Shown one piece after another: positions 4,601 through 64,000 of a DNA stretch of 64,000 nt. A program made the translations under genes and the position numbers. The DNA is from Podarcis tiliguerta (Eukaryota): the NCBI GenBank assembly GCA_965153285.1, contig OZ229115.1. One strand, written 5' to 3'. The notes beneath the pieces were generated by a model, which searched no databases, was not told where the DNA came from, and was given only the letters and a program-made list of their open reading frames with translations. How positions within the stretch are numbered: the stretch's first letter is position 1; every line of letters begins with the position of its first letter.

Positions 4601-4874
4601 CTGATGACTTTTTACTGTTCCCGTTCTAGTTCTGGTCTGAGCGTTAACGAGATGAGGCATTTACTATACCTGGGGCTCTTGGGTTTTTTCTCATATAAAG
4701 CAGCGGTTCCTGTTCTCTCTTTTTTTCTGAGGTGTTGTTATTTGATATATGCAGGGAGCAATCTGTGGGTTCGGGTTTTTTTAATTAGTCATTGGTACCC
4801 CCAAAGCAAAATTAACCATTGGATTGTAAAAATTATGCATGTCTAATCTCTTGTGTCCCAACAGCTGCATAAGG

Positions 4875-4985
4875 ATGACTTCCTTGAAAGTGCCAGTCAT
4901 CGATGTCCAGAATGATAATTTCAAGGAGCTCTGGCCATCCATGCTCTTGGCCATCAAAACATCTAGCTTTATAGCTATTGACACG
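4875..4985 (+). CDS. TOE1: TOE1 coding exon 1 (acceptor after 4864)
   Basis: [37 protein letters not shown]|gtgggt. Confidence 0.92.
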
Positions 4986-16571: not shown

Positions 16572-17578
16572 TTAAATGTCACATTTTGATTGCTCGCATA
16601 CTGATGCTGGTGCATCTGAAGATGGCAGAGAAACAAGATTTGAGATGTCACTATCCACTGCCTCAAAAAGAGAGGCTTCTCTGCCAGACTGTGGGGGAGG
16701 GTTAACACTGAACAATAGTTTGGAAGACTCCGACCTAGTGGAAGGCATGTTCCTTTGAGTTTCATCTTCAACTTCCATATCTTCAGAGGAGATGCAGCTC
16801 ATAAACATCTCTGAGGATCTACTATCTGAATGGTCTAAATTATGTGCCAAGATACCATCTACATTCTGGGCAACTTGCCCCCTGGGCTTTCCGAGTTCTA
16901 CTTCCTTAGCAAAATTTACAGGGCAGTACCCATTTTCATCTTGGGGCTCCAGTCCATCAGAATAGTCCATTTCTTCCTCCTGCAGAAGAGGAGAAGGCGA
17001 GTCCTGCCTATGATGTTTGGCCTGAAAAGGAGGAATCTCAGACACTCCATATTGACTGCTGCTCAGTAGCTTCTGCCGCACTTCAGCCCCCAGCTGGCTG
17101 GGATCGCACCTACTAATGGTTGAAGAGAGATCCCCAAATGTTCTATTATCTTTATGCACAAATTCAAGAGATCCTGGAAGTGATCTGCTCCGTCTTACAG
17201 GAAGGAAAGAGGAGTCCAGCCAGTCAGTGTTAGAAGTCTGCCGGAATGGGGTCTGGTTCATCTTTAGACATTCTTCTGCCTCCGGGGAGTGCAAGTCAAA
17301 TACAAGTGATATCACAGATTTGCTTGGCAAATCAAAAAATTTGACCTTTCCACCTTTCAAGTCTTCCCTAGAATTGAAAGGGTTGACTTTCCGGTTTGCC
17401 CCTTTGCTTGGTGTATAGTAGGGGTCCTGAACATTTATCTTGCGGCAAGGTTTGCGAGAGAATATGTCTGACTGACTGCGCGATAGCCAGATATTGCGCC
17501 GTGGACGGGGTGATTTAGGTGGAATCTTGTCATCCAGTGAACTTAGCCTTTTTACTCCTTGTCCCCTCTCCAGTAAAC
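16572..17578 (-). CDS. TESK2: TESK2 last coding exon
   Basis: (G)[42 protein letters not shown]...KCDI*; ttctag acceptor at 17579-17580. Confidence 0.95.
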
Positions 17579-29500: not shown

Positions 29501-32500
29501 ATTTAAGAGACTCAATTTATGCTGAAAAGTGTGATATAAACTCCCTCTCTCTCTATATATATTTATAAACAAGAGAGAGTTCAGACAATTTTGCACTGTA
29601 AAGGTTTGTCTCAGACAAACAGATTTATCTAAAAACATTAACAGGTAAGAAATGCATCCTCACAATAACTCATTGTCTCCTGCTTCTCATCCTTTTTCAT
29701 TATTCCTTTCTGCCAACTTGAAGGTTTTACAAGCAAACTATCTAAATCCAAATATAAAGTTCACTAGCTTAAATAGCAATTCCATAAATCAAAGGAAGGC
29801 AGTAAAAAGGCTAGCATAAAAAAAATATGATGAGTAGAATTGTTACCATTTAAGTAACATTGGTATTTCTATTTTAGGATTTTTAATTTTAGGATTATGG
29901 AGCTTTTGTACTACTCTGGCTTGTCAAACTTGAAAATCTTGAAAACTTTTCAAGAAGCATAATGGCAACATGGAAATCTACTCCTCATTCTCCACAGTGC
30001 TCTCAGTATATTTTGCATTTAGACCAGGGTGCAGGGAAGAACCTTTGGTCATTAGTCTGATAAGGATCCCAAAATGGTCCACAAGGATGTTTTCATAAAA
30101 AAAAACCCTGAGCTGTCTGTCTCTCCTTGTAAGCTTCATGCATGTGCATCTGGCTGGAAAGCATACAAGCAAAAATGCTACTATTTTTCAAATGAGGAAA
30201 AGAACTGGACCCTCAGCCAGAGCTTCTGTGCTTCACAGAATGCCTCTCAGGCTGTGTTTAAAAGCAAAGAAGAAATGGTGAGAAATGCAAATATTTTAGC
30301 TGTTCAACACAAGTCCTTTGTGATACTGATAAAGATGTTCAACCATTAGGGGCTTTGCTGGGCTTAAATATAAAACCTCTTAGGATCCTACCTAGAAAAC
30401 ACGAACAAGTCAGATAGATACTGGCAAAGGAGGTTTGCAGTGCAATCCTAACCACGCCTACCCAGAAGAAAATCCTATTGAATTAAATGGGGCTTTCTGC
30501 CAGGAAATAGAACTGCTAGTACATTTGCAAAGCTAAGCAGGTCTGCTTTGGTTTCAAAGTGGATGGGGGATTGCAAGGTGAGGTTCCTGCCTCTCAGAGG
30601 GTTGGAACAGATTGCCCGCGGGGTCCCTTCTAACTCTACAATTCTATACCCCATACCTGTGATGTCAAGTATGCAGCAGGTAGGCACACAGCAGCCAACA
30701 AATGATTTGGAGTGTGCTCCCAGTTGTTCCTTGGCAAGTGAGGATTGGTGCTGCTGAAAGAACCAATTACTTTGTATTCCCAGCTTGAATTCAAGCAGGT
30801 GATTCAAATGATTTTAATCTACTGGCATGGCTCAAGCCATGGTGGCAAAGGAAAATAATTACTCTGCGTCATCTGATGTCATGTTGAAGTCATGTAATTT
30901 GGTAATTTGAGGGGACAGCTCCACCCAGCTGTCAAATTGGTCTGCAGGGGATGGGGGGGGGCTGCCAAAATGGCCCACCAGCTGCTAAAGCTTCCCTGCC
31001 CCTGATTTAAAGGGTTCAAAAAGGTTGCACATATGAATACATTATAGTGTTGTAATTCTAACTATCTATAAAGGTAGATATCATCATAGTACAAATGGGG
31101 AGAGGGGTCAACATTGAGAGGATGTAGCTTTTTTAAGGCTACCTAGTGAGTTCAGGGCTGATTCAAACGGGAGAATTCATCGTTTGTATCTCAATCACTT
31201 AAATAGTAAGATAGAGTGAAACCACAGGCAACACTAACAGGAATTATGATTTGCTCACCAATATTGTAACACCAAACAATTTTACACTATTATGTGATAT
31301 CAATGCAGCCTAAGTGCTGTTGTACTAAAGCTTCTCATCTTAGTGTTTCAGGCATAACCTAATTACTTTCAAGGCTCACACAACTCTTCAGCCATAAGTA
31401 TACCACCTGTTAATATTTGCCCTCCATTTGAATTAGTTTAAAAAAGACCACAGTTCAGTTATAAAAATCAGTATACTGAAGTCTGGAAATACTCATATAA
31501 ACAGAAGATGTGGCATTTGGGATGCTTTGCTTTCCAAGAACAGAGACAGTAACTCTTTATTCCATTTTGTCCCATCTCCCCAGAGTTGGCAGACTATTAA
31601 AGTGCATCCCAGCTGGTCATTTGCAGTTTTGGCATGAGAACCTTCACCGTAACTCGGCATTTTACCTATGGCACACTTAAAAAACCACTATCACTATTTT
31701 TTAATCATTAGCTGTTTATAATAGTGTTGTTTATGAATTAGTGCCAAAACAACAGATAATCGTCAAGGTGATAAATTTCTGATTGCTTTCCTCACCAGTT
31801 TGCAATTACAATGGGACATTTATAAGGAAAGAAATGATTTTCATATTACTAGCTGCAATGTTAAATAGTCATAATGACACGGCATCCTGAAAAGCAAAGT
31901 TTATGCAATTATTTGTAGCCCTGTTTTATGCATCAGTTGAAGAGTTGCTGGAGTAAAACTACTACCAGCTTAGTGTTGCTCTGTAGCAGTTTAGGTCACC
32001 TGTAGAACAATGTTGAATGTATCTGAAGTTATGGGGAACATTTAAATATACAGCAATAAACCTTTAAGAAAGTAGGGTGGGACACAGAGACAAGTCTGTA
32101 TGTCTGCATCTTTTTGTAGTTTTATATTATAAAATGTGTAGCAGCTGGATCCCTAGGCTTTGGGAAGTAGAAGTTTGAATAACTTGCTGCGAACAAATTA
32201 AAGAAGTTGTGCAACCACCTTCCCAGGCACATAATCCTAACTCATTTATTTGTGACCTCTACTTCAGGTTAGTTTCTTCTCAGACATCTACACAACATGA
32301 GTTGTTCTGGGAAAGTTTAATCCACTAAACTATGTTTTCAGTGTTTTTTCACAATCTTTTAAAGTGACATTTTACGTAACAGTTTTACAGTTTGAGGCAC
32401 TGAGTGGGGCTGGAGAAAAGTAAAACTACGCAAGATTGTTTGTAGTTCGCTAAGTAATACACGTCTATTGCCAAATGGTTTCATTTGATAGGGACGCATG

Positions 32501-35008
32501 GTACCTTGGATGTCAGATCCCGATGGAAAATGCCTTTATAGTGAAGGTAAGTGAGTCCCAGAGCAATGTCCAGTGCCAGCTTCACCCTTACTGTCCAAGG
32601 CAGGTGTTGATTACCATCCAACAGCTGTTCTAGGTTACCACAGTTGATATACTGAAAATATATTTTAAAAAATTAAAAAGAAAAGAAAAGAACCACAGTT
32701 AAACTTCAAAGTACAGACAGGTGAGGAATTTCTTCTTGGATTTAGTGGGGCAAATGTAAGTTCCTCCAACTGTATTAATGATATACTAACTCAAACCAAA
32801 CAATCATAAAAGTAAATAATCTATTAACTTTAAGATTGGTAGGTGAATGCATCCCCAATAACTCCTGGACATCCTCCTTGTTGGCATCCATCTATCTTGA
32901 GAGACAATGGAGAGTGCGTCCAGGGGTGAAGACAAACTGCTGTGTTAGCAGTACAGAAGTAACTTTCCAGTGTGTATGGAGGTCCTGAGCTGCCCAGACA
33001 GACAAGACCCCCTCCCCTGGCCTCACTGACGTGGTCCAAAGGAAAGCAGAGCAATATGTTTGGCACAAGCTAGGCTGCCTCAGTTGCTGGTAGGAGGGCA
33101 TACAAGGTGCCATCCAACAGTCTTAGGGACCCCATTTGGGATATGTTTAGAAACCACCTTCTTGACCCGTTTTTCATGAATGCACAGGAAACTGTCAAGG
33201 CTGAGTCAGACCTTTGGTCCATCTAGCTCAGTATTGTTAACAGTGACTGTCAGTGACTCTCCAGGGTTTCAGCCAAGGGACATTCTCTCTTTTTCCAATT
33301 TTTTTTTATTAGTTTTCCACAAAATGTTTAAACACGCAAACAAATAAACAAACAATCATAAATCCTAACCTTATTAAAACTAATCTTATTAACATTGCCA
33401 AGCGACTTCCTCGTATCCCCTTGGTTGAGTTTCAGTGTATATCATTTTAAAGGTTTTCCAAAACCTATATTCTCATAAAATTAACTTAGTCACTTAACAT
33501 CTTTCTTTCTTTCCCAATCTAAATTTCAACATAGTAATTTATCACATTACATACTTAAGTCCTAAGCCTATCTGGTATTTGCAAGCCTTTCCAATTAATT
33601 TAACTTAACATATTTAACTAAATAGTCTTTAAATTTCGTCCATTCTTCCTGGTAATCCTCCTCCCTCTGGTCACGGACTCTTCCAGTCAGGTCGGTTAGC
33701 TTCGAAAAATCCATCATCTCAGCCAAGGGACATTCTCAGCCCTACCTAGACAAGCCAGGGATTGAACCTGGGCCCTTTAGCATGCAACACACGTGCTCTG
33801 CTACTGAGCTATGACCCTTCCCTAAAGCACAGTATACACCAAAAGAGGAGGAAATGACAACTGGAAAGAGGTAGTGCAGACAAAACAACTGATAACTGAG
33901 ACATCATCCTAGATTTCAATTAACATGGTGAGTTTTTGCCAGCAGGTGGTGGCATGAAGTAATTCAAGGTTCTCCTCTCTCCCTGTATTTCTACTATAAA
34001 AAGAGTTCTCATGTAGTAGATTTCTAACTGCTAAACACCACACACTGTAGTGCAATATTTCTGCAAGTCAGCCCAGACTTCAGGCTTGTAGAGAAGTACT
34101 ATCAAATAAGTCCCACTTGTTAAACTGCAAGAGCTGAAGAAATTCATGTGCACAAAGAATAAATATACAACATTCATTCTATATTTGCACCCCTTTTTAA
34201 ATACAATGAGACCAAAAATTTATATCCAAGTGGGATTACTTTAACACAAACCAGTGACCCAGCAACTGTATCATCCACTGAGCTACAAATCAAAGAACTG
34301 TTAATTTCTAGCTGTCCAGAATACTTGAGGATCTAAAGAGGATCAAAACGAAGTGTTCCTTGGCTAGATGCCAAACTACTTGGCCCAGATTTTAGGAGCC
34401 AGCTCAAGTTTCTCAACATATTATGCCAGGAGAGTTCAAGGCCACCCCACAAGAAAGTGCAGTTGTTTACCACTTGTGGACCAGGACTAGGTTATGTACC
34501 GATTTCCACTACAAGCAAATTAATTGTGCATATTAACACAGATTGCCCTTTGGAAGCAACAGTTATATGCCCCAGGCAAATGCAAGTTTCTGATGCAGCA
34601 AAAATTAGTCTTCCAGTATCCACTGTGCATGCGTCGTTACTGACATAATTAAAAGAGAGGTGCCCATGAACATACATGTAGGAAATATATTCCGATGGTA
34701 CATGATAACAGTCTTGCACGCACTCTGCTCTATTCTGTTTGTCAGGTCATTATTTGAATTCTATTAATTTTATTCAATTTATGAGTCATCCAGTAATGCA
34801 GCAACTTGCTTAGGAACAAAGGAAGCCGCCTTTTATTGAGGGAGACCCATCAGCCCATCTAGAACATTTGCCAGTCAGATACTCTCATGGACAACCTTCT
34901 GTGGGCCACATGATAGTGGTGCATAGGGCCAGTGGCAAGAACTGGGTGCAGCAACGGATGTGAATCTTTACCTTCGTTCAACCACACAAACATCAGAAGT
35001 CAGTCAGC

Positions 35009-35062
<54 letters not shown>

Positions 35063-38000
35063 GTCCATCTACCATTCAAGAAAACAAGAATCATTGTCAT
35101 AGTTCAAGCACAGATTCGTGCCAGGCAAGAGCACTTGAGGCGGCTGTGGAGCACTACAGTGAGGGGTGTGACCTTGGGAAAATCTCAATGGCTGACTAGA
35201 AAAGGCTTTGGAGGTTCAGATTCGGCCTCTGGGCCTGAGGTTCCCCACCGTGTTCTACTCTGACTGGCAGTAGCACTCCAGGATTTCAGACAGGGGCATT
35301 CCCAGTCCTACCCGGAAATGCCAGGGATTGAACTTGGGACCTTCTGCATGCAAAGCAGATGCTCTGTCACTGAGCTATGGCTCTCCTGCTTGCTTCATCC
35401 AGCACTCTATGAAACCATGCAAATGTTTTGGGATGAAAATAGTGGCATACTTTTTTGATAGTTAAAACAACTGAGCCACAGTATCTACTTTGCAAATCAC
35501 AGATTCCCTGGTGTGAGAATCTGCAGTTTTGGAGCAATACTGATGTCAGGTCTTCTTGAAATGCACCACACCTCCTTTACATGGTACTAAGCTGCAGGAG
35601 ATCACCGTCCTGCTACATAGTGTCCAACCATCATTCTCAAAGAGCCTCCTTTGCACAAGCAGTACTTCCTTCATATTTTTCTCAGAACATATTGTCCTTA
35701 ACAGTTCAGTATTGTTTTGTCTCCTGCATATCATTGTTTGAAGGACTGAGAGGTGTTGTGGCAGACGTGCTGAACCAGTGCCTGGCCTTGATAATGGAAT
35801 TGGTGAGCGACAAAAAACTGAAGCTCAACTCAGACAAGAGATATGCACAGTCAGTAGGTAGCCTTCCCCCGTCCAGATGGGTCAGAATCCCATTGAAGAA
35901 ACAGGTGTGCAAACCTGGGGGGTACTCCTGTATCCTCCATTGTCAATGAAGGAACAAGTGGGCTCCATGCCGCCAAGTGCCTTTTAACAGCTTTGGCTGG
36001 TGGTCCAGCAGCCTTCCTATCTGGATACAGATAGCCTGGCTTGAGTGATGTGGTAATAGGATAGATTACTGCATTGTGTTTTATGTTGAAATACCTTTGA
36101 AGACTATTCAGTAACTGCAGCTAGTGCAGAATGTGGTAGCCAGACTGACCAGGACTAGCTGGCCTGAACATATAACTTCAGTTCTGGCTAGCTTGTGCTG
36201 ACTGTCAATATTTTTCCCCTGACCCCAATTCAAAGTGCTAATCTTGACATATAAAGTGCTAATCTTGACATATAAAGTCTTGGGTGGCTATGAATGCCAG
36301 CACTTCAAGGACTGCTTTTCCTCACATGAAGATGAAATCAATATCTGATGTCCTTCTGTGTACCCCCTCCAACAGATATTCAGAGGGTGTCAACAAGAGA
36401 AGCTACCCACAAATAATGGATTGTCCTTCCCCAAGATGCTTCCTTGGCACTGACTTTGTCACCTTCATAGTGCCAGCCAAAAACATTTTTATTCTCACAA
36501 GCATTTGGAAAGAGTTCCAATAGTCTGACTTTTGGTTATTTATTTTTAGTGTTCATTCCTATGAATGTGGGCTGATTATTTTTATATTGCTGGGTGGTTT
36601 TTGTGAATTTACACTTTTCATATTTGTTTTGTTCCAATGGCTTTTTATTGTGTATAAACTGCATAGTGTTGTAAATCACTGTGGGACTTTTTCCTGCATG
36701 AAGCAATTCATAAATTGATTTGGAACAAACCACTGATTAGTTTGCGGTGTCTATACTGCAGACAATAATTAAACTGGGCTTACCAGGTATTTTAGTATTA
36801 CCCATTTTTGAATTCAGCTTACAAGTATATTAGCACATTGCATTTTTACCACAATCACTCTTTTTTCTTCTATGGGCAATAGTCAACGTCACAGAATTGG
36901 ACCTCCACTCATGCAACTGGACTTCCTCTTTCCAATCCCCTGCACCTGCTACAGCTCAGCCGCCATAACAGATTTGCAGCATGTACAGAGGGCTGCAATG
37001 GGAGCAGGAATCCATTCCACAAACTGTAACGTGCCACTGGTAGATCAGTGGACATCACCCTCTTGTTTATTGAATGCTATGTCACCACAGCAAAATGAGC
37101 TTGGCATGTAAAGCATGGAGTTGTCCTGTATGCAGATACTGGATTTGACTACAAATCTTTAATGAAGGTTTAATTAAGAAAAACCTTTAATAGTGAAAGG
37201 GTATGATAGTGCAAACGTGTCCAATTTCATGCTGATTGCCTGTTTGGCTTCAGAGTACTTTGTCTATTGTAACTGTAACTTAATCTCATTTGTTGATGCA
37301 GTTAGCACATAAAAAAGGTAAGATCCAGTCTCCTCAAACATTTGGTACCATAGATCTGAATAAATCTTCCCCAGGAGGAATTATAACACTTTGCTCATTT
37401 CTCTTTACATAGTAGGGCTATGGCTCATTTCACCAGCCCCACAGGCTCCCATAGTCAAGAATCTCAGGTGAAAGGATCTCTATTACCAAGCTATTCCACC
37501 CTCCTCCTCCCAACAAGTTATCAGTCCCAACGCGGGTACTGGAAGATGTGGTCTTTGCAATTTCAAATATGCATGCTCTGAATGTCTGCCATTTCAGTTA
37601 AATTAACTATCCTATGGGGCCTTGCTCCAGCTGATGCTACAAGATAAGCACTGCTTTAACAGTTGGGCCAAAAAGTTCATTGTGTGTACAAATGAAATTA
37701 CAATTCTACAATACTTAAAACCAAATTAATCCAACTCTTCAAAATAGGGATAAGGCTCCACCTAATTATATATTTGGAATAGCCTTCTAAGCAAGGGGAG
37801 GAGGGAAGTAAAGTAAAAAAGTGTAATGATGTGACAGCTTTTGCTCCCATCATGTACAAAACAAACTGTGGCTTTGCAAGTAACAGAGGACTTTTTCCAA
37901 CTGGAACAAGGGTTAAGTACATCAAGAGTGGCAGCTCGGGACTGAATACTTGTGCTCCAAGTATGCCAACAATTCAAATTCCATTAAAAATACAAGTCTG

Positions 38001-52790: not shown

Positions 52791-55700
52791 GCACATATAT
52801 GACTGGACAAGAAATGTATAAAGTCTACCATTTCAGAGTAGACTACACTAAAATCCAAAACTAGGCTGCTCAAACAATGATTCTTCTCCATGAGCTGTCA
52901 GGTCAGAATACAGAAGGAAAATACATAATTAAAATATAAAAGAAAAGACCCAGTAAAGAAGATTTTAAAAGGAGAGGAAACTGAACCACTATTCAAACCC
53001 TGCATAACATCTCCCACCACCCACAACAACTGGTTATGCCAGCTGCAGCTCTTGAGAGTTCAGGTCCGACAACACGTGGAGGGCCACAAGTTATCTACGC
53101 CTGTTCTAGTAACTTTCCTCAATTATTTTGAGCAAGTAGGCAATGTTCAAATATGTTGTTTTTGTTCTTCAGTGGATTGGAATAGGTCATAAGGGGAAGT
53201 TCCTATTCAAATAGATGGTTTGACAGTTTTCTAAAAAGAAAATAAATAGCTCCAAGATGTAGAAGCAGCTCGGACCTTCATTAAACAATGAAAACTCTGA
53301 AGATAACGTGGTTCTCTTCTCAGATATTGGTAGCAATTCCTTTGACCAATAAATGAAGTAAAACAAATGCAAAACGCAACAGCAGGGATCCAAAATGACA
53401 CATACAGTATTCTTGCACTCAGGTGATTTTTCTCTTCCCATCCCCACCACCCTCAAAACCTTTCAGGACTGAAGGACACTCTGGAACACCAACTCACGTA
53501 TAAGACATGAACAGCTGCTGCTGAAAAGTAGCATTTTCTTTCCCCAACATGCACAAGTGTGCTTTTCCAGACACACAGGGAGGTGGGAAGTTTAGTGCTT
53601 AGACCTGGAAAGTGTATGCAGTCATGTTTCTGTGTCATGAATTCCTACTATGGTTTGTTTTAACGGAAAAAGACATTGAAACAAAACCTGAAGGCAGAAG
53701 CAGCCTCCCATAGATGTATGTGTTGCTGGATAACATACTCAGCACAAACTGCACTTCCCAGATGGCCTACATTGTCATGGGTATGACCCAAAATATCCAG
53801 AATCAAAAACACATGGAAAAGCCTTGCTTGTTCTGAACATTTCTGTTTTTCTTTGAAAAAGGAACTGGGCATATGGCAGCTCTCTTTAAGCTCAAGCATT
53901 AAAGGCTTTTGTTGTGGAAGCTAAAAGCTCCACAGTAAGTTCTCCCCACATACCCATATTATCTACACCTCATCAACTGCAGTTTGCTTTAAATATTATT
54001 GCCATTACTAAATGCAACAAGATAACTGGAGTACACAATAAATTCTATATATGGGCAAAATCCAGTTGAGGATTATTCTGTTTTCTCTGGAAGAAGCATA
54101 GCATCACAATTTTGTATGACCAAGGACTGCATAGTACACAAGCCTAGGCCAGGGTTTTAGTTTTATGAAGTAATTTTCACAATAGGTACATACTATGTAA
54201 AGCTTCAACACAAACTGGAATGCAATTAGAACAATATATTCAGACATTAAATATAGAATGTCTGCTGTAAATCAAAATTTGAGTAGGTAAAATGGCCATG
54301 CAGAAAACTTGTTAAACTTCTTCACCTCATTTAACAGTGGACCATGTAGATAGAGAACTTAGCTTATGCCACTCCCACATCTGCTCTAAGTAATATGTAT
54401 TGCTATGCCATTGGACAAGATAAGAAAAAGAGTGAGAGTGAGAAAGTGAGAGTTCAATGACATTAATGGGTTACTCATACCATAGACCAGGGGTCTGCAA
54501 CCTTTAAGACAAAAAGAGCCACTTGGACCCGTTTCCGAAGAAAAAAACTGGGAGCCGCAAAACCATTGCATGCGCGCCGCTGCCCTCCGAGCTGACAGCG
54601 GGCGGGAAGGTGACGTCAGGACGGTGCGTGACTAACGCATACACCGCCCCCATGCGACGTCACAGCCAGTACAGTACCCGCCACAGTGGGGAGTGTCGGG
54701 GCACACAATGCGCCTCCTCCCCTCGCTAGTATCTGCCCCGGAGCCGCGGCAAAGGTGTAAAAGAGCCACATGCGGCTCCGGAGCCGCGGGTTGCCGACCC
54801 CTGCCATAGACCAAGGTCCTGCAGCCTCAATCCTTGTAATTAAAAAGTGGAACAGGGCACACTTCAAATAATTCTTCTTACTGACCAGAGGCTAAAGGTG
54901 CATAAGAAACTAATCCAGTCAGTAAAAAGGAAAGATTGCAAGATTGGCTTATTTCCTCAGGCAGTCTTATCATCTCCTCAGACTTGTAATGTTTTGTCTA
55001 TAAAATGTAATATGGTCAGAAAGTGCGGTTTTTGTCTTGCAACTTAAACGTGCAAAGGAAATTTGAATTGTCTGTCTCATGGAGTGGTCCAGTAATGAGA
55101 TATTCTTTGAGGTAGGAAAAAGACTTGAAGATCATAATTCATTGGGCAAGATCTTATTCTTAGCTGCCAATTCATTCTGATCCCAAGTAGTGAAGGAGAA
55201 TATATGTTGTTCTTTTGGATTGCCAACGGATGAGGTTTTAATTTTAACATCTTTTCTCCCTCCTGTTTTTACAGTTTCATGATGTTTTTAATTTTTGGCC
55301 TGCAAGTCACCTTGCTTCAGTCTGAAAAATAGAGCTAGATATTTAAATAAAACATACACATTTCTGCAAGCTTTCCAACTTAAAAAATCTAAATGTATTC
55401 ATGTATTTAGTATAGATATGTTACTCAGCTGCCAACCAGGTGTCTCATCTCACTGTACTTTAAGCTTTCCAGAAATACTCATAGATGTTAAAAATTCCAA
55501 GGCATTTAAAGTCCCTGTTACTCAGTGATCTTAGGCAAAGCACAGTCAAAAGACCAACAGCAAGAGAATATTTATTCATAATTTGTTTAATTACTATATG
55601 AAAAATAGGGAAAGAGGAAAATTAAGGTCAGTCTACTCACCTTGAACACCTCAGAGAAGAAACCAGATCCTATTTTCTCACAAGAAAAGTCATCAAGTCG

Positions 55701-55862
55701 TGTAAGTCTTGAAAAGGCACTAATCAAGGCCTTGTATGAAGAAGTCCAAACTCTGCCCATCTGGGACACGTTCCCATCGCCTCCGCCACCCCCATCAAAA
55801 TCTTCAACGCGCTCCAAGCGTGGTGGAAATCCTGCTATTGAATTTCGCTTACTCCGATCCAT
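16572..55862 (-). CDS. TESK2: Dual specificity testis-specific protein kinase 2 (LIMK/TESK family), about 674 aa
   Basis: Exons 55641-55862, 47291-47412, 43968-44016, 32505-32651, 24985-25067, 23269-23344, 21875-21958, 20533-20619, 19954-20101 and 16572-17578 total 2025 nt in frame; [15 protein letters not shown] start, [33 protein letters not shown] 14-3-3-type motif. Confidence 0.97.
19954..20101 (-). CDS. TESK2: TESK2 exon
   Basis: [49 protein letters not shown](G). Confidence 0.94.
20533..20619 (-). CDS. TESK2: TESK2 exon
   Basis: [29 protein letters not shown]. Confidence 0.97.
21279..21443 (-). mobile_element. tRNA(Ala)-derived squamate SINE, degenerate
   Basis: B-box-like ggggttgaacctgg and tail ataggaagctgcctta shared with other copies. 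Confidence 0.65.
21875..21958 (-). CDS. TESK2: TESK2 exon
   Basis: [28 protein letters not shown]. Confidence 0.97.
23269..23344 (-). CDS. TESK2: TESK2 exon
   Basis: [25 protein letters not shown]; AAG acceptor. Confidence 0.94.
24350..24454 (-). mobile_element. Old Penelope-like element terminal relic with a degenerate hammerhead motif
   Basis: Minus strand GCAA-CUUAUGA-A-AUGGAC-UCCA-GACCAU-GAAAGCUU-AUGC. Confidence 0.6.
24985..25067 (-). CDS. TESK2: TESK2 exon
   Basis: [27 protein letters not shown](S). Confidence 0.97.
25878..26136. mobile_element. Three tandem ~85-bp palindromic MITEs separated by TAA (PIF/Harbinger-like)
   Basis: Units 25878-25964, 25968-26049 and 26053-26136; relatives at 3955-4045 and 30437-30525. 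Confidence 0.55.
27889..28120 (+). mobile_element. CR1 LINE 3' fragment
   Basis: gggttcaaattacaagaaaggagattc...aggaagaactttctgacagtaagagctgtt, ending in a (ATCTATG)n-like tail. Confidence 0.8.
28815..28951 (-). mobile_element. tRNA(Ala)-derived SINE, degenerate
   Basis: ggattgaacatgg...ccactgagctacggcccc head. Confidence 0.6.
30134..30277 (+). pseudogene. C-type lectin-like domain exon (CLEC2/CD69/KLR-type), antisense in a TESK2 intron; gene or pseudogene status unresolved
   Basis: [48 protein letters not shown]; polypyrimidine tract + AG before 30134 and GTGAGA donor after 30277. Confidence 0.8.
30560..30647 (+). mobile_element. CR1 3' terminal fragment
   Basis: ttcctgc...gggttgga...ggtcccttctaactctacaattcta. 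Confidence 0.7.
32505..32651 (-). CDS. TESK2: TESK2 exon
   Basis: [49 protein letters not shown]. Confidence 0.97.
32872..33130. mobile_element. Interspersed repeat, probably an RTE-type LINE-related fragment (family uncertain)
   Basis: Recalled lizard repeat motif gacaagacccc...ggtccaaaggaaagcagagcaata...ttggcac; not verified by search. Confidence 0.4.
33185..33822 (-). mobile_element. tRNA(Ala)-derived SINE split by an L1 insertion
   Basis: SINE tail 33185-33287 and head 33719-33822 rejoin at the duplicated 19-mer. Confidence 0.8.
33288..33718 (-). mobile_element. 5'-truncated L1-clade LINE with a 19-bp TSD
   Basis: ORF2 C-terminus-like [40 protein letters not shown]; AATAAA plus A-rich tail; TSD tcagccaagggacattctc at 33269-33287 and 33719-33737. 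Confidence 0.85.
34811..35382 (-). mobile_element. SINE (34811-34862 + 35251-35382) interrupted by a hAT-like MITE containing (CT)n(CA)n
   Basis: SINE tail and tRNA-like head flank sequence related to 1835-2196. Confidence 0.6.
35735..36720 (+). mobile_element. Degraded L2 LINE (ORF2 3' region and tail)
   Basis: Relic peptides KKLKLNSDK and [28 protein letters not shown]. Confidence 0.8.
38244..38430 (-). mobile_element. Sauria SINE, 3' part
   Basis: Degenerate (ACCTTT)n tail; gggtcatatggccagcatgact core. Confidence 0.85.
42922..43142. mobile_element. Old palindromic MITE (gggttgtatccaa ends)
   Basis: Imperfect inverted arms; relative at 61768-62060. Confidence 0.5.
43753..43880 (-). mobile_element. 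CR1 3' terminal fragment
   Basis: catagaatcataga...ggaagggacc...tcatctagtccaacccc. Confidence 0.8.
43968..44016 (-). CDS. TESK2: TESK2 exon (49 nt)
   Basis: [16 protein letters not shown]. Confidence 0.96.
46907..47018. mobile_element. Short palindromic MITE-like element
   Basis: ttactcagag...gaaattaatg / cattaatttc...ctgagtaa inverted arms; relative at 48069-48183. Confidence 0.55.
47291..47412 (-). CDS. TESK2: TESK2 exon
   Basis: [40 protein letters not shown](K). Confidence 0.96.
47677..47953. mobile_element. GC-rich hAT MITE with a perfect 8-bp TSD
   Basis: TSD aggggagt at 47669-47676 and 47954-47961; termini caggggcggaggaag / cttcctccgcagttg. Confidence 0.85.
52757..52788. repeat. 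(AC)n microsatellite
   Basis: Direct reading. Confidence 0.95.
54488..54803. mobile_element. hAT-Charlie-like MITE with a perfect 8-bp TSD
   Basis: TIRs caggggtctgcaacc / ggttgccgacccctg; TSD ccatagac at 54480-54487 and 54804-54811. Confidence 0.9.
55641..55862 (-). CDS. TESK2: TESK2 first coding exon (probable acceptor at 55948, 86-nt 5'UTR part)
   Basis: [74 protein letters not shown]|gtgagt. Confidence 0.97.
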
Positions 55863-56204: not shown

Positions 56205-56423
56205 CAGTCATACCTCGGGTTAAAGATGCTTCAGGTTGCGTCCCGTGGCAACCCGGAAGTAACGGAACAGGTTTCGCCGCTCGCGCATGCACGATGCTCA
56301 AAATGACGTCACGCACATGCACAGAAGCGGTGAATCGCAACCCGTGCACACGTGGGTTGCGTTCTGCTCAGGTTGCGAATGGGGCTCCAGAACAGATCCC
56401 ATTCGCAACCAGAGGTACCACTG
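56205..56423. mobile_element. Tigger-like (TcMar) MITE
   Basis: TA|CAGTCATACCTC...GAGGTACCACTG|TA. Confidence 0.85.
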
Positions 56424-56880
56424 TAATGGGATACTAAAGTGTTGCATATTTGCTTGCAAGGTTGAACACAAATGACTGCTGCCTTCTCTTGTCTTTTTGG
56501 CATCTGTTAAGGATGTTCCTCTTTCAACAAACCTTCTAAAATCTTTATACTAACTGCTATCTGTTTCAGTTCAAATTGGTTTTATGTGTTGTTATAATAT
56601 ATGCAATTGTTTTAAATGTTTATATGTGCAACTGTTTTATTATTCTCTAAGTCACTTTGGGATTCCCTACAGGAAGAGATTCATAAATGAAAGAAAATAA
56701 TAATTTCTCCTTTCACACACAGTGTTTAACTGAATTTTAAAAATATAGTTTAACATTTTAAACTTCTAATTTCAGAATGTGCTAGATCCCTGTACCCCAT
56801 TCCAGCTAGAGCACGATGAATAGTGAAGCAATCCTCCACACACATATCTCAGCATGGTGAGGATGCAGTCAGTCCAACAT

Positions 56881-57262
56881 AAAAAAGGTAAAGGTAAAGG
56901 ACCCCTGATGGTTAAGTACAGTCAAAAGTGATTATGGGGTGCAGCACTCATCTTGCTTCAGGCTGAGGGAGCCAGCGTTTGTCCACAGACAGCTTTCTGG
57001 GTCATGTGGCCAACATGACTAAACCGCATCTGGCACAACGGAACGCTGTGATGGAAGCCAGAGTGCACGGAAATGCCATTTACCTTCCCATTGCAGTGGT
57101 ACCTATTTCTCTACTTGCACTGGTGTGTGTTTGAACTGCTAGGTTGGCAGAAGTTGGGACAGAGCAATGGGAGCTCACCCCATCGTGCAGATTCAAACTG
57201 CCGACCTTCTGATCAGCAAGCCCAAGAGGCTCAGTGGTTTAGACCACAGTGCCACCTGCTCT
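56881..57262 (-). mobile_element. Full-length Sauria SINE
   Basis: (AAAGGT)n tail on the plus strand, conserved core, tRNA-like head at about 57180-57260. Confidence 0.9.
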
Positions 57263-57399
57263 CTGCAGCTGTGCCTGTGCTGTGCTGAGATCCCTGCTTG
57301 CCCCAGAGATTCAAGGGAGAGCTCTTTCAAGAGCCAGCAGCAATGTGTTGCACTACTGATCCGTAGTTGATATTTTCACCTGAGGTTTACAGTTGGGAG

Positions 57400-58140
57400 T
57401 TTTTTAGTTTAGAGAAAAGACGGGGGGAATAACAGAGGGGTGTAAAATTATACATGGAGTGGAGAAAATGGATAAGGATAGTATTAGAATTTGGGGGCAT
57501 CCAATGATTCTGGTTATTAGAAGAGTCAGTACAGACAAACGGAGCTATGGAATCTGTGGTGGCCATGAATTTGGATGGCTTTGAAAAACGATAAGACAAA
57601 TTCATGGAAGATTGTTAGTATTTTTCAAGAGAGATTAAAGGGCACACTGGAACTTCAGGTTTGTGCAATTAAAATTAATTAAAGTCCTCTGACTAGCACT
57701 ACAGATCCACTTTAAAAACTCAGACTTTCTGCAGATTACTAAGTGATGAGGAAAACACATTGAAAAGTGTAAGATGAACAAATGATGACCAAGATATGTA
57801 AGCAGAATGAAATCTCATTGAGATAAAACTGCCCCATAAACAAATCAGAACAAGTGTTCAGTAAATACCAGGCATAGTCTATCTGCCACATAAGCTTTGT
57901 GCAAGCAAATTAGGGGGAATGCCAAACAAGCAGGTGGACTATAGGAGCCTTAAGGCCATTAATGGCTACTAGCCATGACTGCTATGTTCTATCCCCACTG
58001 TCATAGGCAGTACGCCTCTGAATAGCAGTTCCTGGGAATCACAAGCGGCAAGAATGCTGTGGCCCTCATGTTCTGCTTGTAGGCTTTTCTTAGGCATCTG
58101 GTAGGCCACTTTGGCCTGACCCAGTAGGACTTTTATTATG
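57400..58140 (+). mobile_element. Degraded CR1-like fragments
   Basis: tttttagtttagagaaaaga...gtggccatgaatttggatggctttgaaaaacgataagacaaattcatgga; tail-like segment about 57950-58140. Confidence 0.55.
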
Positions 58141-61100
58141 TTGTTACCTAGAAGAATTGTAGCAATTGACTCACAAGGCCACTCAACCACTAACCTATCG
58201 GTCACTGCCATGATGCCCATGAAGGCCTTATCTGGTGCCCCAGAATTAAGAATGATCCTCAGATTCCCAGTTTTCATTTTAAATAAGATTTTATAGCATT
58301 TTCAGAATAAGAGATATGAGGTAAATGCCCAGACACCATTATTTGCTTTTGTACCAAATCAGCCTGTTCAACCCTTTCCATGCTTTACCCACCATATTTT
58401 TTGGTCACCTTGTACATTTCGCTGGTACTGGGGAATGCTCCCTGTTGTCAATAGAAAGCAGCAGCAGCATTGTATTTGAGGGGGGAAATCAGTATTGTTT
58501 AATCTCCACAATCAGAATTTCTGGGGGTAAGGAGCAGCAATGACTATACCTGCCCTATTTTTGGGTTTTGCCATGCTCACCTGCCCCCATGGCAGCCAAG
58601 CAGTATAGAAATGAAAATGATGATGGTGATGGTGATGGTGTGTTATGCCTCTCTTCCTTATGGTAGCCAGAGGTATCACAACAATCAATCAACATAAATA
58701 TTGTTAAATCTTGTGATTGATGCCCACGAGACTTTCTCAAAATTTAAGATGTGAATGCTGGTCTAAAAAAGTTAGTGCCCACTGTATTAATCTATTGGAT
58801 TGCCTTGGTATGACATTTATAGGTAGTTTATCTTGCTTCCACCTTTCTCTGTAAGGCAAGGGAAATTTTTCACCCACAAATTATCACTTTTTACAATGCT
58901 TTGAAGATGCGGTATCAGCATCTTCTACATCTTACCTTTTGTGAAGTATTTTAAATGCATAGCCTCTGTCAGTGATTAACTGCTTCTCCAAAAAGAAAAC
59001 TCCTAGTTTTAGCTAGCGCTATCATATTTCTCACGTCCCACAGATGGAATCAGTCCCAAGAGGTGACCTTCTTTACCCTGTACTATTCTGGTTCAGGCAG
59101 AGCCTGTCACTACATAGTGTACTAGTTTGGTGGAAATTAATTCACATTATAAAAGGACGTCTCACATTAGCAAAGCAAAGTCTAAACCCAATAAAGTGAC
59201 CAGGCATCAACTTTCTGAATGGAGCCAGGGAGTCTCAAATTTATACTTCACACCAGACAGACTGGTATTTTTAATCTTGGAACGTAGTTGTGGTGCAAAA
59301 ACAAACAAACAAAAAACCTCACACAGATTTCATTCCTTCAGTGCTTGTGCCAGTTAACATGTAGGGAACTTTCAACTACTATAACCAAATTAAAGAACAC
59401 AGTTACAATTGCCCATTCTAATTCTCTAATCTGGACCTAGCTTGCCTCCACAAGAAGATGCCCCCCAAAAAACTGAATTTCACATCTCTCTAGTGCAACT
59501 GAGGAAGGTGGAAGATGGATTAGTGTGTATACCATGAATTGCAGCTTGTGTCTTCCAAAAAGTGAGAGCATTACATGTTTCTCCCCAAACTACATGCACT
59601 ATCCCCTTATTCACTTCTACCTACCCAAAAGTTTTCATACTTGCTCAGGCCCTGCACCCATGACACCTAAATGTATCTTTCGTGTTCAGAGGCAGTATAT
59701 ACCAAATGCTACAGAAGAACAGGGCTAACTGTGATACAGTACTCTCATGACCTACTTGAATTCCCAGAGACGTTTTATTGGTCACTGCTGGAAACAGGAT
59801 GCTAAACTATATGGAATACAAAGCAGTGGTGGGGCCTGAACCCCAAATTTGCTCTTGCAACATTTTACGTAAGACAAGCGAATGTGTTTGACACAAGTGA
59901 ATTGCCCATGGCTATGAACAAAGTACTGCTCAAGGCAAATGTGAGGTCTATGCTACAAACATTAAATTCCTCAAATCAATTTCCCTTTTAATTTACTCTT
60001 GAACACTTATTTCCTTCTGCTTTCTTTCAACCCATTTTTCTGTTACCACCTGCCTAACTCTCCTTATATGCAACCACTCTTCTCTTCCTACAACTTAAGA
60101 AAACAGGACAGCATAAAAGTCAAAGGGCATCAGTTGTCCAATCAACAGCTGTGCACCAGCATCCAGATCACCCTCCTGCCTCTACAATCACTACCTTCCA
60201 CTGTATTTTAGTGGAGGCACTACTCAGTGCAAGACAATAGGGGCCTGTAAATCCTTTTAGCATTCCTGTACATGCCCTGATAACTCAGAGACTGTAATTA
60301 TTTTAAAATATTTTTTCCCTTCAATTTGACAGATTTTAAAGTGAACATGTTTTCAGAAAGCTCCTCGCTAAATTTTATTTCAATTACGTGACTGCATATC
60401 AATTTCCAATAATTTTTAAAAATAATATTTTTGAATGGCAAACCTGCCAGCATATTGGATATACTGTAAAGTTGTAATTACCCAAATGTGAAACTCAATA
60501 GATGACTTACAGTCAGTTACAATTACAATCTCCCACTCTGCTTTGTAAGGTTATGGGATGAATGAAATAAAATAGTCCACATAAGCCACCCTGAGCACCC
60601 TTGAAGGAAGATAATGTACCAGGATAAAACAAATAAAACCAGGTGTGTTTATTCCCCCCCCTTCAATCTTGTGTTCCTGTTCAGATATGCCTACAGTTAC
60701 AGCATATACTAATAGAAGCTAGCCATGTGGTTTACTCCAGAAGGGAGAGAGCAGAAGTTCTCCAGAAACAGTTGTAGAGCACAGAAATACTTGGGAATGC
60801 CAGTTCTTAAATGGGAGGTGTATTTGTGTGTAACTTTCCTACCAAGATGCATGAAAAGAGCTGACATTTACAAAAGAGCATTCTAGGCTTCAAAAAATAT
60901 TTGATTGTGATCAAAGGACAAAGTAAGCCAGCTTCTTATTTTCAGACCCCTGCAATAATCTGCCTTTGTTTTGTCTGGAGCTAATGGGAGGTGTAACCCC
61001 AAACACTTGGATGGCAATAGCCAACACGGTAAACTATTGAACAGCTCAGTGGCCCATCTATCTCATTATCCTGACCTACACAAGATGCTTCAGGTAATTC

Positions 61101-61827
61101 CCATTCTGCCTGCCCAAAGTGCAGGCCAGCAGATATAATACCCCATGGATTTCCACCAGCTGTAACCTGTAGAAAACCCCATACTGGGTATTCCAGACAG
61201 GGAGAGATTGAACATGTCCAGATTTTTCTAGTTCCCAATCTAGGCCTGACAGCCACACCAGAGCAGGTTTTACCTGGTCCCCACCTTCCATTGCAGACAG
61301 CAGGGGCAGCAGGGCTATGGATGCAACAGTGGTCCATTCCTCAATCACACCCTGCTGCTGCTCAGCCAGGGTTAGAATAGCTCTGTCAATTTTAAAAGGA
61401 ATCCATGTCTGTAGGAGTATTACCAGCATAAGCAAATCTAAGGCAACCAAAGGATTCATTGCAGAACCAGAGGAAAGACAGACTTTCTGGAAAAATGAAA
61501 GTATGAGCAGAAGCCTAGCCCTGTGGGTAAGGAAATTGGACAGATAGTGCTTTGTTATTCATCCACACAAGGAACAGTCATTGTCAGCTTTTATTTTTCA
61601 ATTTACAGGATATCAGAACCTAACAAAAGCCACAATGGAAGCATGACAAAGTCAGTGGACATAGCTTATTCAAAATATTTTTGTTCTCTTGAATTATGGC
61701 TTACAACAATGCAGACTTGGGCACCTACAGAACACTTACAGAAGTGCAAACATAGCAATTTAAACACAGGGTTGTATCCAATGTTGTCTGTGAATAAGCA
61801 AAGCAGACTTCTGCTCACACAACAATG

Positions 61828-62217
61828 ACACTTCAGTCATTTGAAAAAAGTATAATAATAAAAAAGTGAACAGGCAACTTGTTTGATTATTGGTGAGCAA
61901 TCTTATCTAGGTCATGATTTATAGAGGAAAGGTACAATCTATATGCATTTACTTCACCACCATCTGTCTCCCCTGCACCTCCAAAGCTGCTCTGGAGGGT
62001 TGGGAAAGAAGAGGACATTGCGCAAGCCAAAGTCCACTTGCACAACATTGCATTCCATCCATGTGCTACAGCTAAAGACATTATTAATAAGAGTTCTACA
62101 CTTCAGTCATTTGAAAAAATAATAATAAAAGTGAACAGGCAACTTGTTTGATCATTGGTGAGCAATCTTATCTAGGTCATAATTTATAGAGGAAAGGTGC
62201 AATCTATATGCATTTAC
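61828..62217 (+). repeat. ~120-bp direct repeat (61828-61952 and 62098-62217)
   Basis: Two near-identical copies read directly. Confidence 0.9.
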
Positions 62218-62437
62218 GTCAGCATGTGTTCTGCTATCAAGATGCAAGTCCGCAAGAGATATCTTTCCCACAGCTAGCACTTCAACTGCAGGAAAGTCAT
62301 ATTCACACAGGAGAGATCCATAACTTTATTACTCCAGCAGTCCACCTAATGGTTAGTGCCCACAACAACTCTCATGATGGAAATGCTCTACATACACCGT
62401 ACCATTTTTAAAAATTAGACTGATTAAGTGGCTGAAC

Positions 62438-62573
62438 CAGGCATAGGCAAACTTGGCCCTCCAGATGTTTTGGGACTACAACTCCCATCACCCCTAGCTA
62501 ACAGAGCCAGTGGTCAGGGATGATGGGAGTTGTAGTCCCAAAACATCTGGAGGGCCAAGTTTGCCTATGCCTG
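62438..62573. mobile_element. Near-perfect palindromic hAT MITE
   Basis: About 50-bp inverted arms caggcataggcaaacttggccctccagatgttttgggactacaactcccatca. Confidence 0.9.
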
Positions 62574-63811
62574 GAACAATACTTACTGCAGTGATCATTT
62601 AACTTGTTTAATATTACAAACTTGGAAACACAAGCCAGCTACCTCCCTACATATTTTTTGTATTATGTATAATTTCCCCTACCTAGTATGCACTCTTTTT
62701 TAAAGGCAAAAGCAGTGAACAGGCAATCCCGCCAGATCACAGCTTCCCTTATGTATTCTATGAGACATGAGATTGCATTGCTGGTGCTGGACTGGGACTG
62801 GAATATAACATCAAAACTGTTTTCCTTTTTTTAAATCACTGGGAAATGCCCTAAGTTACACAAAGCAAGGCTTGGCTACAAATAAGGACCTCACAAGTGA
62901 CCAGTCACAAGATACAGTTAGAGACCACATATCTCACCAATTACAAGAAACTGGTGACAGATAAGACAATATGGCTGTTACCGTTATGTCCTATGACTGT
63001 GTTAGACTAGATGTACTGAATCAGATCCAGGGTCCAGGCCTTATGCTCTTAAATACGAGTGCATAGTCAGGATTGTTTAACACACATTAGTTATGCTTTA
63101 ACTGTGAAGAGGTCCCAAGTATATAGTCTTCAGTAGAAGACTGAACATTTCAGTAGAACATAGATGCCTGAGAACAGTCGACTGCTGATTTACATTATCA
63201 ATCCTCTACACAAAGCTGTTTCTTTTCTAAAGCATCAATTTGCAAAACAGTATATAAAATGCAAAGTTCCTGTGCGCATATGCAAGTAGTAATTCCAGAC
63301 AGAAACCAAAATGCCAACAGAGAATGGCCCATTGTCCCCTGCCTATTCTATTGTTATTGCAAATGTTTCCTTGGTGGGATTTTTTTATTTTACTCTTGCC
63401 ACAACCTATCATATATATTAGGAAACAAACTCAAATAGCCAAGTTTTCATAGAAAACCAGAGAACAGATTCTTAGATTAGGAAAAATATTTATACAGTAT
63501 CTACACTTTTGCAACCAATATTGTCCTTTAGAACGCCCGTCTACTATCATATTCCCTATAACTATTCTATTCATTTTCTCCACATCATACTTATTTTACA
63601 TCACTATCATGCCATCATTTACTTGCCATTTTCTAAACTAAAAAAGTCCCAAATAGTGTCATCTTTCATCATAAGGGAGTTGCTCTATCCCCTTTTCATG
63701 TAGTAGTTTGCTTCTAAATGGAAGTGAAGCAAACCACTATTATAAAAGAATGCTTAGATGAACAGTATACTCGCTCAGAAAAGTAATACATCTTACACTA
63801 AATATTGTAGA

Positions 63812-63812
<1 letters not shown>

Positions 63813-63876
<64 letters not shown>
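63813..63876. repeat. (TA)n microsatellite
   Basis: Direct reading. Confidence 0.95.
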
Positions 63877-63877
<1 letters not shown>

Positions 63878-63879
<2 letters not shown>

Positions 63880-64000
63880 GTTTTCGTAGATTTTCACGGG
63901 TACAGGAATGCAGGTTTTGGTGTCCTCGGGTGTCTTCCCGTGTAAAAGTTGGGGTGTCTAGGCGACGTTTCGACGAGGTCTCACTCGTCATCTTCAGGCT
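63878..64000 (-). mobile_element. Penelope-like retroelement terminus (continues off the right edge)
   Basis: Abrupt CpG-rich sequence abutting (TA)n and carrying a minimal hammerhead motif. Confidence 0.7.
63961..64000 (-). ncRNA. Minimal type I hammerhead ribozyme motif
   Basis: AGC-CUGAAGA-U-GACGAG-UGAGAC-CUCGUC-GAAA-CGUC-GCC: complete catalytic core and a perfect 6-bp stem II. Confidence 0.75.

What the first reader, a model, noticed from the sequence alone, without database searches (positions are those of the whole stretch)
63878..64000. Intact minimal hammerhead ribozyme core in a Penelope-like element, sense to TESK2
Seen on the minus strand: CUGAAGA (63997-63991), one extra U, a perfect stem II GACGAG/CUCGUC with a 6-nt loop, GAAA (63971-63968), then CGUC, with predicted cleavage after 63964. 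Stem III is reduced to the palindrome ACGU. Known: Penelope-like retroelements carry such minimal type I hammerheads in their terminal repeats, thought to cleave as dimers. The element abuts a (TA)n tract and retains CpGs, so it looks young. Inference: if the TESK2 first exon lies further right, the pre-mRNA carries a potentially self-cleaving motif, and a second copy beyond the window could supply the dimer partner. Only 3 nt of the 5' stem I strand are visible and two of them pair.
Basis: partly seen in the sequence, partly recalled or inferred. Interest (0 to 1): 0.8.

Follow-up and report, generated by a model that had tools for sequence, protein, structure and literature searches.

The report
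Penelope retrotransposon end carrying hammerhead motif
The hammerhead ribozyme motif is real, but it is the ordinary 3' end of a young Penelope-like (Poseidon-type) retrotransposon copy that landed in a (TA)n microsatellite of a lacertid lizard genome, and nothing shows that it cuts the TESK2 transcript.

Summary
Observation confirmed. A specific pattern gave 0 matches in 100 shuffles; a generic descriptor gives 0.09 per window.

It is a known kind of thing. The motif has every published hallmark of Penelope-like-element (PLE) mini-hammerheads. It also matches the Anolis Poseidon element PAc in architecture:
- A9, the extra U and G10.1 spell an AUG that opens a 38-codon frame.
- That peptide is 68% identical to the N-terminus of a PLE-type ORF fragment.
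- The element stops 114-115 nt after the AUG, where PAc starts reverse transcription.
- It abuts AT-rich target DNA, here (TA)n.

So this is the 3' terminus of a PLE copy whose body lies beyond the window. It looks young: CpG o/e is 1.2 against 0.14 in the flank.

Untested: helix I (only 3 nt are visible), any partner copy, and cleavage.

The TESK2 link is unresolved. Strand and sense are right. The ATG exon (55862-55638) has an acceptor-like site upstream, and the window shows no promoter. PLE hammerheads are weak in vitro, and the Anolis one needs its protein.

The parts
63964..63997 (-). Minimal type I hammerhead core: C3-A9 (63997-63991), extra U (63990), helix II 6 bp with a 6-nt loop (63989-63972), G12-A14 and A15.1 (63971-63968), C15.2-G16.2-U16.1 (63967-63965), C17 (63964). 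Cleavage is predicted between 63964 and 63963.
   Evidence: Sequence read. Pattern uniqueness. Helix II is the only stable element in the local fold. Features match Cervera & de la Pena 2014.
63998..64000 (-). The only visible 3 nt of the 5' strand of helix I (AGC). Two of them pair with 63963-63962; the rest lies beyond the window.
   Evidence: Helix I cannot be judged.
63955..63963 (-). 3' strand of helix I (GCCUAGACA), directly after the predicted cleavage site.
   Evidence: Assigned by position in the type I topology (inference).
63878..63991 (-). Start of the element's ORF. The AUG is formed by A9, the extra U and G10.1, and 38 codons stay open up to the (TA)n junction.
   Evidence: Translation. 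68% identity over 37 aa to the N-terminus of P0122, and 69% to P0123 from a coral snake. The AUG-in-hammerhead layout is the same as Anolis PAc.
63877..63912 (-). AC-rich terminal stretch, equivalent by position to the PAc 'tail' (nt 85-119 of PAc). The element ends at ...ACAUU, 114-115 nt after the A of the AUG.
   Evidence: One search compared by eye with the PAc consensus. PAc reverse-transcription start sites lie at nt 111-118 and its tail at 85-119. The extent of the tail here is inferred.
63813..63877 (.). (TA)n microsatellite, the AT-rich insertion target. Pure runs at 63814-63835 and 63844-63877.
   Evidence: AT-rich cleavage preference of the PLE endonuclease. (TA)n targets were noted for other copies in this genome.
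55638..55862 (-). Context: first coding exon of TESK2 (ATG at 55862-55860), 8.1 kb to the left of the hammerhead and on the same strand. An acceptor-like site lies about 87 nt upstream of the ATG (~55950).
   Evidence: tblastn with Podarcis muralis and Lacerta agilis TESK2.

Best explanation
The stretch 63877/8-64000 (minus strand) is the 3'-terminal piece of a copy of a Penelope-like retrotransposon of the Penelope/Poseidon type. The rest of the copy lies to the right of the window.

The copy was made by target-primed reverse transcription:
- The element's GIY-YIG endonuclease cut AT-rich DNA, here a (TA)n microsatellite.
- Reverse transcription began inside the element RNA, in the AC-rich stretch about 111-119 nt downstream of the ORF's AUG.
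- It then ran back through the hammerhead that overlaps that AUG.

The hammerhead is therefore carried along as part of the element's pseudo-LTR. As RNA it could cleave between C63964 and G63963. That would need helix III to be supplied in trans by the ACGU palindrome of a second copy, or help from the element's protein.

At this locus it is most likely an inert passenger.
- Shown: the core, the architecture, the ORF start, the end point, the target and CpG retention.
- Inferred: the insertion mechanism (from Anolis PAc biochemistry) and the inertness.
For: 1. All conserved core positions are present at the stated coordinates. Chance expectation is 0 to 0.09 per window.
2. The four hallmarks that Cervera & de la Pena list for PLE mini-hammerheads are met: an unpaired nucleotide between 9 and 10.1, a G10.1-C11.1 pair, a long helix II, and palindromic 15.2-16.2.
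3. The layout is the same as Anolis Poseidon PAc. [quoted passage not shown]
4. The frame from that AUG stays open for 38 codons. The peptide matches the first 37 residues of P0122 at 68% identity (library-wide E 2.8e-4; pairwise 1e-13).
5. P0122 continues into a sequence that aligns by eye at about 45% identity with the PAc N-terminal region.
6. P0123, from a Micrurus transcriptome, carries the same 37 residues and then runs into a microsatellite at the same boundary.
7. The element ends at +114/115. PAc starts reverse transcription at 111-118, and its genomic tails end near 119.
8. The junction is with (TA)n, and the PAc endonuclease prefers AT-rich DNA.
9. CpG o/e is 1.2 against 0.14 in the flank.
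10. The host is a lacertid lizard: TESK2 is 98% identical to Podarcis muralis. PLE hammerheads are already reported in reptiles.
Against: - No RT or GIY-YIG sequence can be seen, because the body lies outside the window and could not be fetched.
- Rfam reports no hammerhead.
- The comparison with the PAc nucleotide and protein sequences was made by eye from a supplement, not with an aligner.
- An open 38-codon frame alone has a 16% chance probability.
- P0122 has no Pfam domain of its own, and the protein atlas gave no usable hit.
Confidence: 0.9

Rival explanations
1. The motif is a working self-cleaving element inside TESK2 intron 1. The pre-mRNA would be cut at 63964/63963, either with a partner copy just beyond the window or with PLE protein in trans, and this would affect TESK2 expression.
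For: - It lies on the same strand as TESK2.
- An acceptor-like site sits 87 nt upstream of the ATG.
- No promoter-like CpG island lies between 56.4 and 63.8 kb.
- The two CpG-rich patches beside the ATG exon are transposons, so a non-coding exon 1 to the right of the window is possible.
- The core is intact and the copy is young.
Against: - No RNA evidence could be obtained, so the TSS is unknown.
- Helix I shows only 2 pairs and a mismatch.
- The intermolecular helix III is marginal: the designed dimer folds at -20.3 kcal/mol against -22.6 for two monomers.
- PLE mini-hammerheads cleave poorly in vitro even as dimers.
- The PAc ribozyme cleaved only with its protein, and no RNA-seq reads start or end at its cut site.
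- Scan notes describe other such copies in introns of this genome.
Confidence: 0.04
2. The piece belongs to a non-autonomous, pLTR-derived tandem array (an animal 'non-LTR retrozyme') rather than to an ORF-bearing PLE copy. Tandem units would then supply dimer partners on the same strand.
For: Animal retrozymes are reported to derive from PLE pLTRs and to occur in the same lineages. Only the pLTR end is visible here.
Against: - No second copy exists anywhere in the 64-kb window.
- The visible piece keeps the ORF start in frame and ends at the PLE reverse-transcription start site.
- Two other copies in this genome were read by follow-up agents as inverted 5'-truncated PLE pairs.
Confidence: 0.06
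3. A chance match to the short hammerhead consensus in unrelated DNA.
For: The core boxes are short. A generic descriptor hits 8.5% of shuffled windows. Rfam is silent.
Against: - The specific pattern never appears in 100 shuffles.
- The peptide encoded from the embedded AUG matches PLE-type ORF N-termini.
- The end point and the target match the PAc biochemistry.
- CpG content sets the 123 bp apart from its flank.
Confidence: 0.01

Closest known systems
Poseidon_Ac (PAc), the Penelope/Poseidon-clade PLE of Anolis carolinensis (Frangieh et al. 2024, PMC11167929)
   Same: - The hammerhead core is immediately followed by an extra U and by a helix II whose first G completes the ORF's AUG.
- Both share GAAACGUC with the ACGU palindrome.
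- The cut site lies 25-26 nt after the start codon.
- Helix II has 6 bp.
- The 3' end of insertions lies about 111-119 nt into the ORF, in an AC-rich stretch.
- The target is AT-rich.
- The N-terminal ORF motif reads E-x-L-R-x-H at the boundary.
   Different: - It is a different subfamily. Only the core and the last ~25 nt align well by eye (about 75% identity).
- Loop II has 6 nt rather than 7.
- N7 is A rather than G.
- The helix I sequence differs and is mostly unseen.
- The host is a lacertid, not an iguanian.
Minimal hammerheads of metazoan PLE pseudo-LTRs (Cervera & de la Pena 2014, PMC4209133; Lunse, Weinberg & Breaker, cited in PMC6765202)
   Same: - No hairpin helix III.
- Palindromic 15.2-16.2.
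- An unpaired base between 9 and 10.1.
- A G10.1-C11.1 pair.
- A long helix II.
- Mostly found as single motifs from truncated copies.
   Different: Nothing that could be tested. Helix I length (4-5 bp in the family) is not visible.
Animal non-LTR retrozymes (Cervera & de la Pena 2020, PMC7229834; Li, Clavereau & Pollet 2026 preprint)
   Same: A type I hammerhead with weak helix III. These elements are thought to derive from PLE pLTRs.
   Different: Retrozymes are short head-to-tail tandem units without an ORF. Here there is no tandem copy in the window, and the ORF start is retained.

Membership tests
Hammerhead ribozyme, PLE-type minimal type I | Conserved core: C3 U4 G5 A6 N7 G8 A9, G12 A13 A14, A15.1-U16.1, H17 | tested here: met
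   All are present at 63997-63964 on the minus strand.
Hammerhead ribozyme, PLE-type minimal type I | Helix II closed by G10.1-C11.1, longer than the canonical 4 bp | tested here: met
   Six Watson-Crick pairs, GACGAG/CUCGUC. This is the one stable hairpin in the local fold.
Hammerhead ribozyme, PLE-type minimal type I | Unpaired nucleotide between A9 and 10.1 | tested here: met
   U at 63990. The feature is listed.
Hammerhead ribozyme, PLE-type minimal type I | No hairpin helix III; palindromic 15.2-16.2 that allows a dimeric helix III | tested here: met
   A-CG-U at 63968-63965. The dimer helix is only marginally stable by cofold.
Hammerhead ribozyme, PLE-type minimal type I | Helix I of about 4-5 bp | tested here: inconclusive
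   Only 3 nt of the 5' strand are in the window: 2 pairs and 1 mismatch. Extension failed.
Hammerhead ribozyme, PLE-type minimal type I | Match to a curated covariance model (Rfam hammerhead families) | tested here: not met
   No hammerhead match at gathering score or at E up to 10. The motif lacks a hairpin helix III and is cut at the window end, which may explain the miss. This counts as weak evidence against membership.
Hammerhead ribozyme, PLE-type minimal type I | Site-specific self-cleavage | not testable with these tools
Penelope-like element, Penelope/Poseidon clade | [quoted passage not shown] | not testable with these tools
   The body lies to the right of the window. No ORF of 90 aa or more stands out as a PLE ORF; only ten were scanned with Pfam, and none hit RT or GIY-YIG.
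Penelope-like element, Penelope/Poseidon clade | ORF N-terminus homologous to PLE ORFs and starting inside the hammerhead | tested here: met
   The 38-aa peptide matches P0122 at 68% identity. P0122 aligns by eye with the PAc N-terminal region. The AUG is A9-U-G10.1, as in PAc.
Penelope-like element, Penelope/Poseidon clade | 3' boundary at the internal reverse-transcription start (with 'tail'), joined to AT-rich target DNA | tested here: met
   The end is at +114/115 against 111-119 in PAc. The junction is with (TA)n.
Penelope-like element, Penelope/Poseidon clade | Pseudo-LTR arrangement (partial tandem or inverted copies) | not testable with these tools
   The window ends 3 nt upstream of the core. 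Other copies in this genome are noted as inverted pairs, which is a lead only.

The most novel reading that the evidence does not exclude
TESK2 exon 1 lies to the right of the window, so this intact, sense-oriented hammerhead sits in intron 1. In testis, where both TESK2 and PLEs are likely transcribed, PLE protein or a neighbouring copy would then assist cleavage of the nascent TESK2 pre-mRNA. That would make a young transposon-borne ribozyme a modifier of a host gene.
Probability: 0.03. Interest if true: 0.55.

Novelty: already known. Interest (0 to 1): 0.12.

Why it matters
As it stands, this is one more copy of a well-described element class, so it matters little. It does show that a sequence-only reader can place a mini-hammerhead correctly. 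It also adds a lacertid example in which the AUG-inside-the-hammerhead layout and the +111-119 end point found in Anolis PAc recur. That supports the view that internal initiation of reverse transcription is general in squamate Poseidon-type elements. It would be of wider interest only if host pre-mRNA cleavage were shown.

Tried and rejected
- Rfam at gathering score on the whole window and at E up to 10 on 63700-64000: no hammerhead, only (TA)n-driven noise.
- A second copy in the window: none.
Local scripts only read the window file already held.
- Metagenome scan for the 34-mer with a free loop: 0 hits.
- TSS by CpG islands: I first took 56.0-56.6 kb for a promoter island and then rejected this. 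The patch 56205-56427 has imperfect terminal inverted repeats and internal hairpins. The patch 54450-54810 has terminal inverted repeats (TIRs) and a duplicated flank. The GC-rich stretch at 56.9-57.3 kb is a tRNA-derived SINE by eye.
- Pfam on the 38-aa peptide and on P0122/P0123: nothing.
- P0121 from the big search is a low-complexity false positive.
- The protein atlas on P0122 gave no usable hit.
- Scan notes for the neighbouring genes MMACHC and PRDX1: none.
The word search used the last-exon ORF alone, by reference.
- The PAc consensus from the paper's supplement was compared by eye only, because it has no reference that could be passed to an aligner.

Full report
**1. The observation**

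- AGC at 64000-63998
- CUGAAGA at 63997-63991
- an extra U at 63990
- GACGAG at 63989-63984
- loop UGAGAC
- CUCGUC at 63977-63972
- GAAA at 63971-63968
- CGU, then C at 63964, followed by GCCUAGACA.

All conserved hammerhead positions are present, and helix II has six Watson-Crick pairs. Cleavage would fall between 63964 and 63963.

The pattern CTGANGA-N(4-30)-GAAACGTC occurs once in the window and in none of 100 shuffles. A looser descriptor finds only this site, against 0.09 expected per window.

Rfam reports no hammerhead. I give this little weight: the motif has no hairpin helix III, and the window end cuts it 3 nt upstream of the core.

**2. What it is**

[quoted passage not shown]
- a long helix II
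- palindromic 15.2-16.2
- a short helix I.

All but helix I can be checked here, and all are met.

Frangieh et al. (PMC11167929) characterised the Anolis Poseidon element PAc. In PAc:
- The cut site is 26 nt after the start codon.
- The endonuclease prefers AT-rich DNA.
- Reverse transcription starts inside the RNA, 111-118 nt into the ORF, in an AC-rich stretch.
- Genomic copies carry a 'tail' spanning nt 85-119.

The present motif has the same layout:
- A9, the extra U and G10.1 spell AUG (63991-63989).
- The cut site is 25 nt after that codon.
- The frame stays open for 38 codons.
- The element stops at ...ACAUU, 114-115 nt after the A of the AUG.
- It then meets (TA)n.

By eye, the PAc consensus in the paper's supplement shares the core, GAAACGUC and the last ~25 nt (about 75% identity). 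This includes the codons for E-x-L-R-x-H at the boundary.

**3. Protein-level test**

Pfam finds nothing in the 38-aa peptide. The word search cannot see longer relatives of so short a query. I therefore used the full-library HMMER search.

Two real hits start at their own residue 1 or 2:
- P0122 is 189 aa and comes from a Logan contig. It is 68% identical over 37 residues (pairwise E 1e-13).
- P0123 is 169 aa and comes from a Micrurus surinamensis transcriptome. It is 69% identical.

P0122 continues into sequence that aligns by eye at about 45% identity with residues ~35-115 of the PAc protein. P0123 runs from the same E-N-L-R-x-H boundary straight into a microsatellite-encoded repeat. That is an independent copy, in a snake, that ends at the same point.

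The third hit, P0121, is a low-complexity repeat protein and is discarded.

**4. Reading**

The 123 bp are the 3' end of a Poseidon-type PLE copy in minus orientation, inserted by target-primed reverse transcription into a (TA)n tract. The body of the copy, which may be full-length or 5'-truncated, lies to the right of the window.

Scan notes show 34 notes on PLE hammerheads in this same genome. Two follow-up reports read other copies as dead, head-to-head, 5'-truncated Poseidon-type pairs in (TA)n. I treat these as leads that agree with my own evidence. If this copy has that form, the second hammerhead is on the other strand and cannot act as a same-strand dimer partner.

**5. Age**

The fragment has 9 CpG in 123 bp (o/e 1.2). 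The 7.4 kb to its left has o/e 0.14. This fits a very recent insertion. Whether related species share the insertion could not be tested.

**6. Host and gene context**

The last-exon ORF of the kinase gene (16575-17693, minus strand) was searched alone, by reference. It finds TESK2 of Podarcis muralis at 98% identity and of Lacerta agilis at 94%. The genome is therefore a lacertid lizard, probably a Podarcis species.

tblastn with those proteins, together with the frame scan for the exon that isoform X2 lacks, maps ten coding exons on the minus strand from 55862 to 16575. A CAF1-family (TOE1-like) gene lies on the plus strand at 4.8-10.6 kb. The hammerhead is therefore sense to TESK2 and 8.1 kb upstream of its ATG.

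**7. Is it in the pre-mRNA?**

I first took the CpG-rich patches beside the ATG exon for a promoter island. Both are compact transposons with terminal inverted repeats. The GC-rich stretch at 56.9-57.3 kb is a SINE.

A strong acceptor-like site, a pyrimidine tract followed by AG, lies about 87 nt upstream of the ATG. No island-like stretch exists between 56.4 and 63.8 kb. A non-coding exon 1 to the right of the window is thus possible, and so is a CpG-poor promoter next to the ATG exon.

My verdict on this point is that it cannot be told; I put inclusion at roughly 40%.

**8. Would it matter?**

Several results argue that it would not:
- PLE mini-hammerheads show no monomer activity and low dimer activity in vitro.
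- The PAc ribozyme cleaved only when its protein was added, and it was dispensable for insertion in vitro.
- No Anolis RNA-seq reads start or end at the PAc cut site.
- Here the intermolecular ACGU helix is marginal: the designed dimer folds at -20.3 kcal/mol against -22.6 for two monomers.
- The visible part of helix I has two pairs and a mismatch.

A host effect is therefore unlikely.

**9. Verdict**

The link to the pre-mRNA and the dimer partner are unproven. The feature belongs to an already known kind and is ordinary for this genome.

Noticed in passing
window 56205-56427: Compact CpG-rich element (about 220 bp, CpG o/e about 1.1) with imperfect terminal inverted repeats (15 of 18 nt by eye) and three internal hairpins built on GGTTGCGA/TCGCAACC. 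It looks like a MITE, not a promoter island. It contains a perfect TGACGTCA site.
   Followed up: partly
window 54450-54810: A second CpG-rich, MITE-like element in TESK2 intron 1. It has terminal inverted repeats (CAGGGGTCGGCAACC type) and a duplicated TGGTCTATGG flank.
   Followed up: partly
window 56900-57300: tRNA-derived SINE on the minus strand, judged by eye. It accounts for the GC-rich stretch upstream of TESK2.
   Followed up: no
window 35321-35377 (minus): Rfam tRNA match (38.4 bits, model positions 8-63 only) inside a TESK2 intron. It is probably the head of a tRNA-derived SINE rather than a tRNA gene.
   Followed up: no
window 4839-10611 (plus): ORFs with the first and last parts of the CAF1 ribonuclease domain, read as a TOE1-like gene lying tail-to-tail with TESK2.
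   Followed up: partly
window 32484-32672 (minus): The TESK2 exon that encodes the HRDLTSK catalytic-loop segment is absent from the 'isoform X2' models of Podarcis muralis and Lacerta agilis. Those predicted isoforms would lack part of the kinase core.
   Followed up: no
P0123 (UniRef A0A2D4NR46, Micrurus surinamensis): A transcriptome-derived 'uncharacterized protein' that is the same PLE ORF start (37 aa) running into a microsatellite-encoded THTH repeat. It represents a transcribed truncated PLE end in a snake, with the same boundary as here.
   Followed up: partly
window 58001-64000: Two small runs guessed to be RNA, from a further coded organism, hold 6-7% of the sampled words of this stretch.
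   Followed up: no
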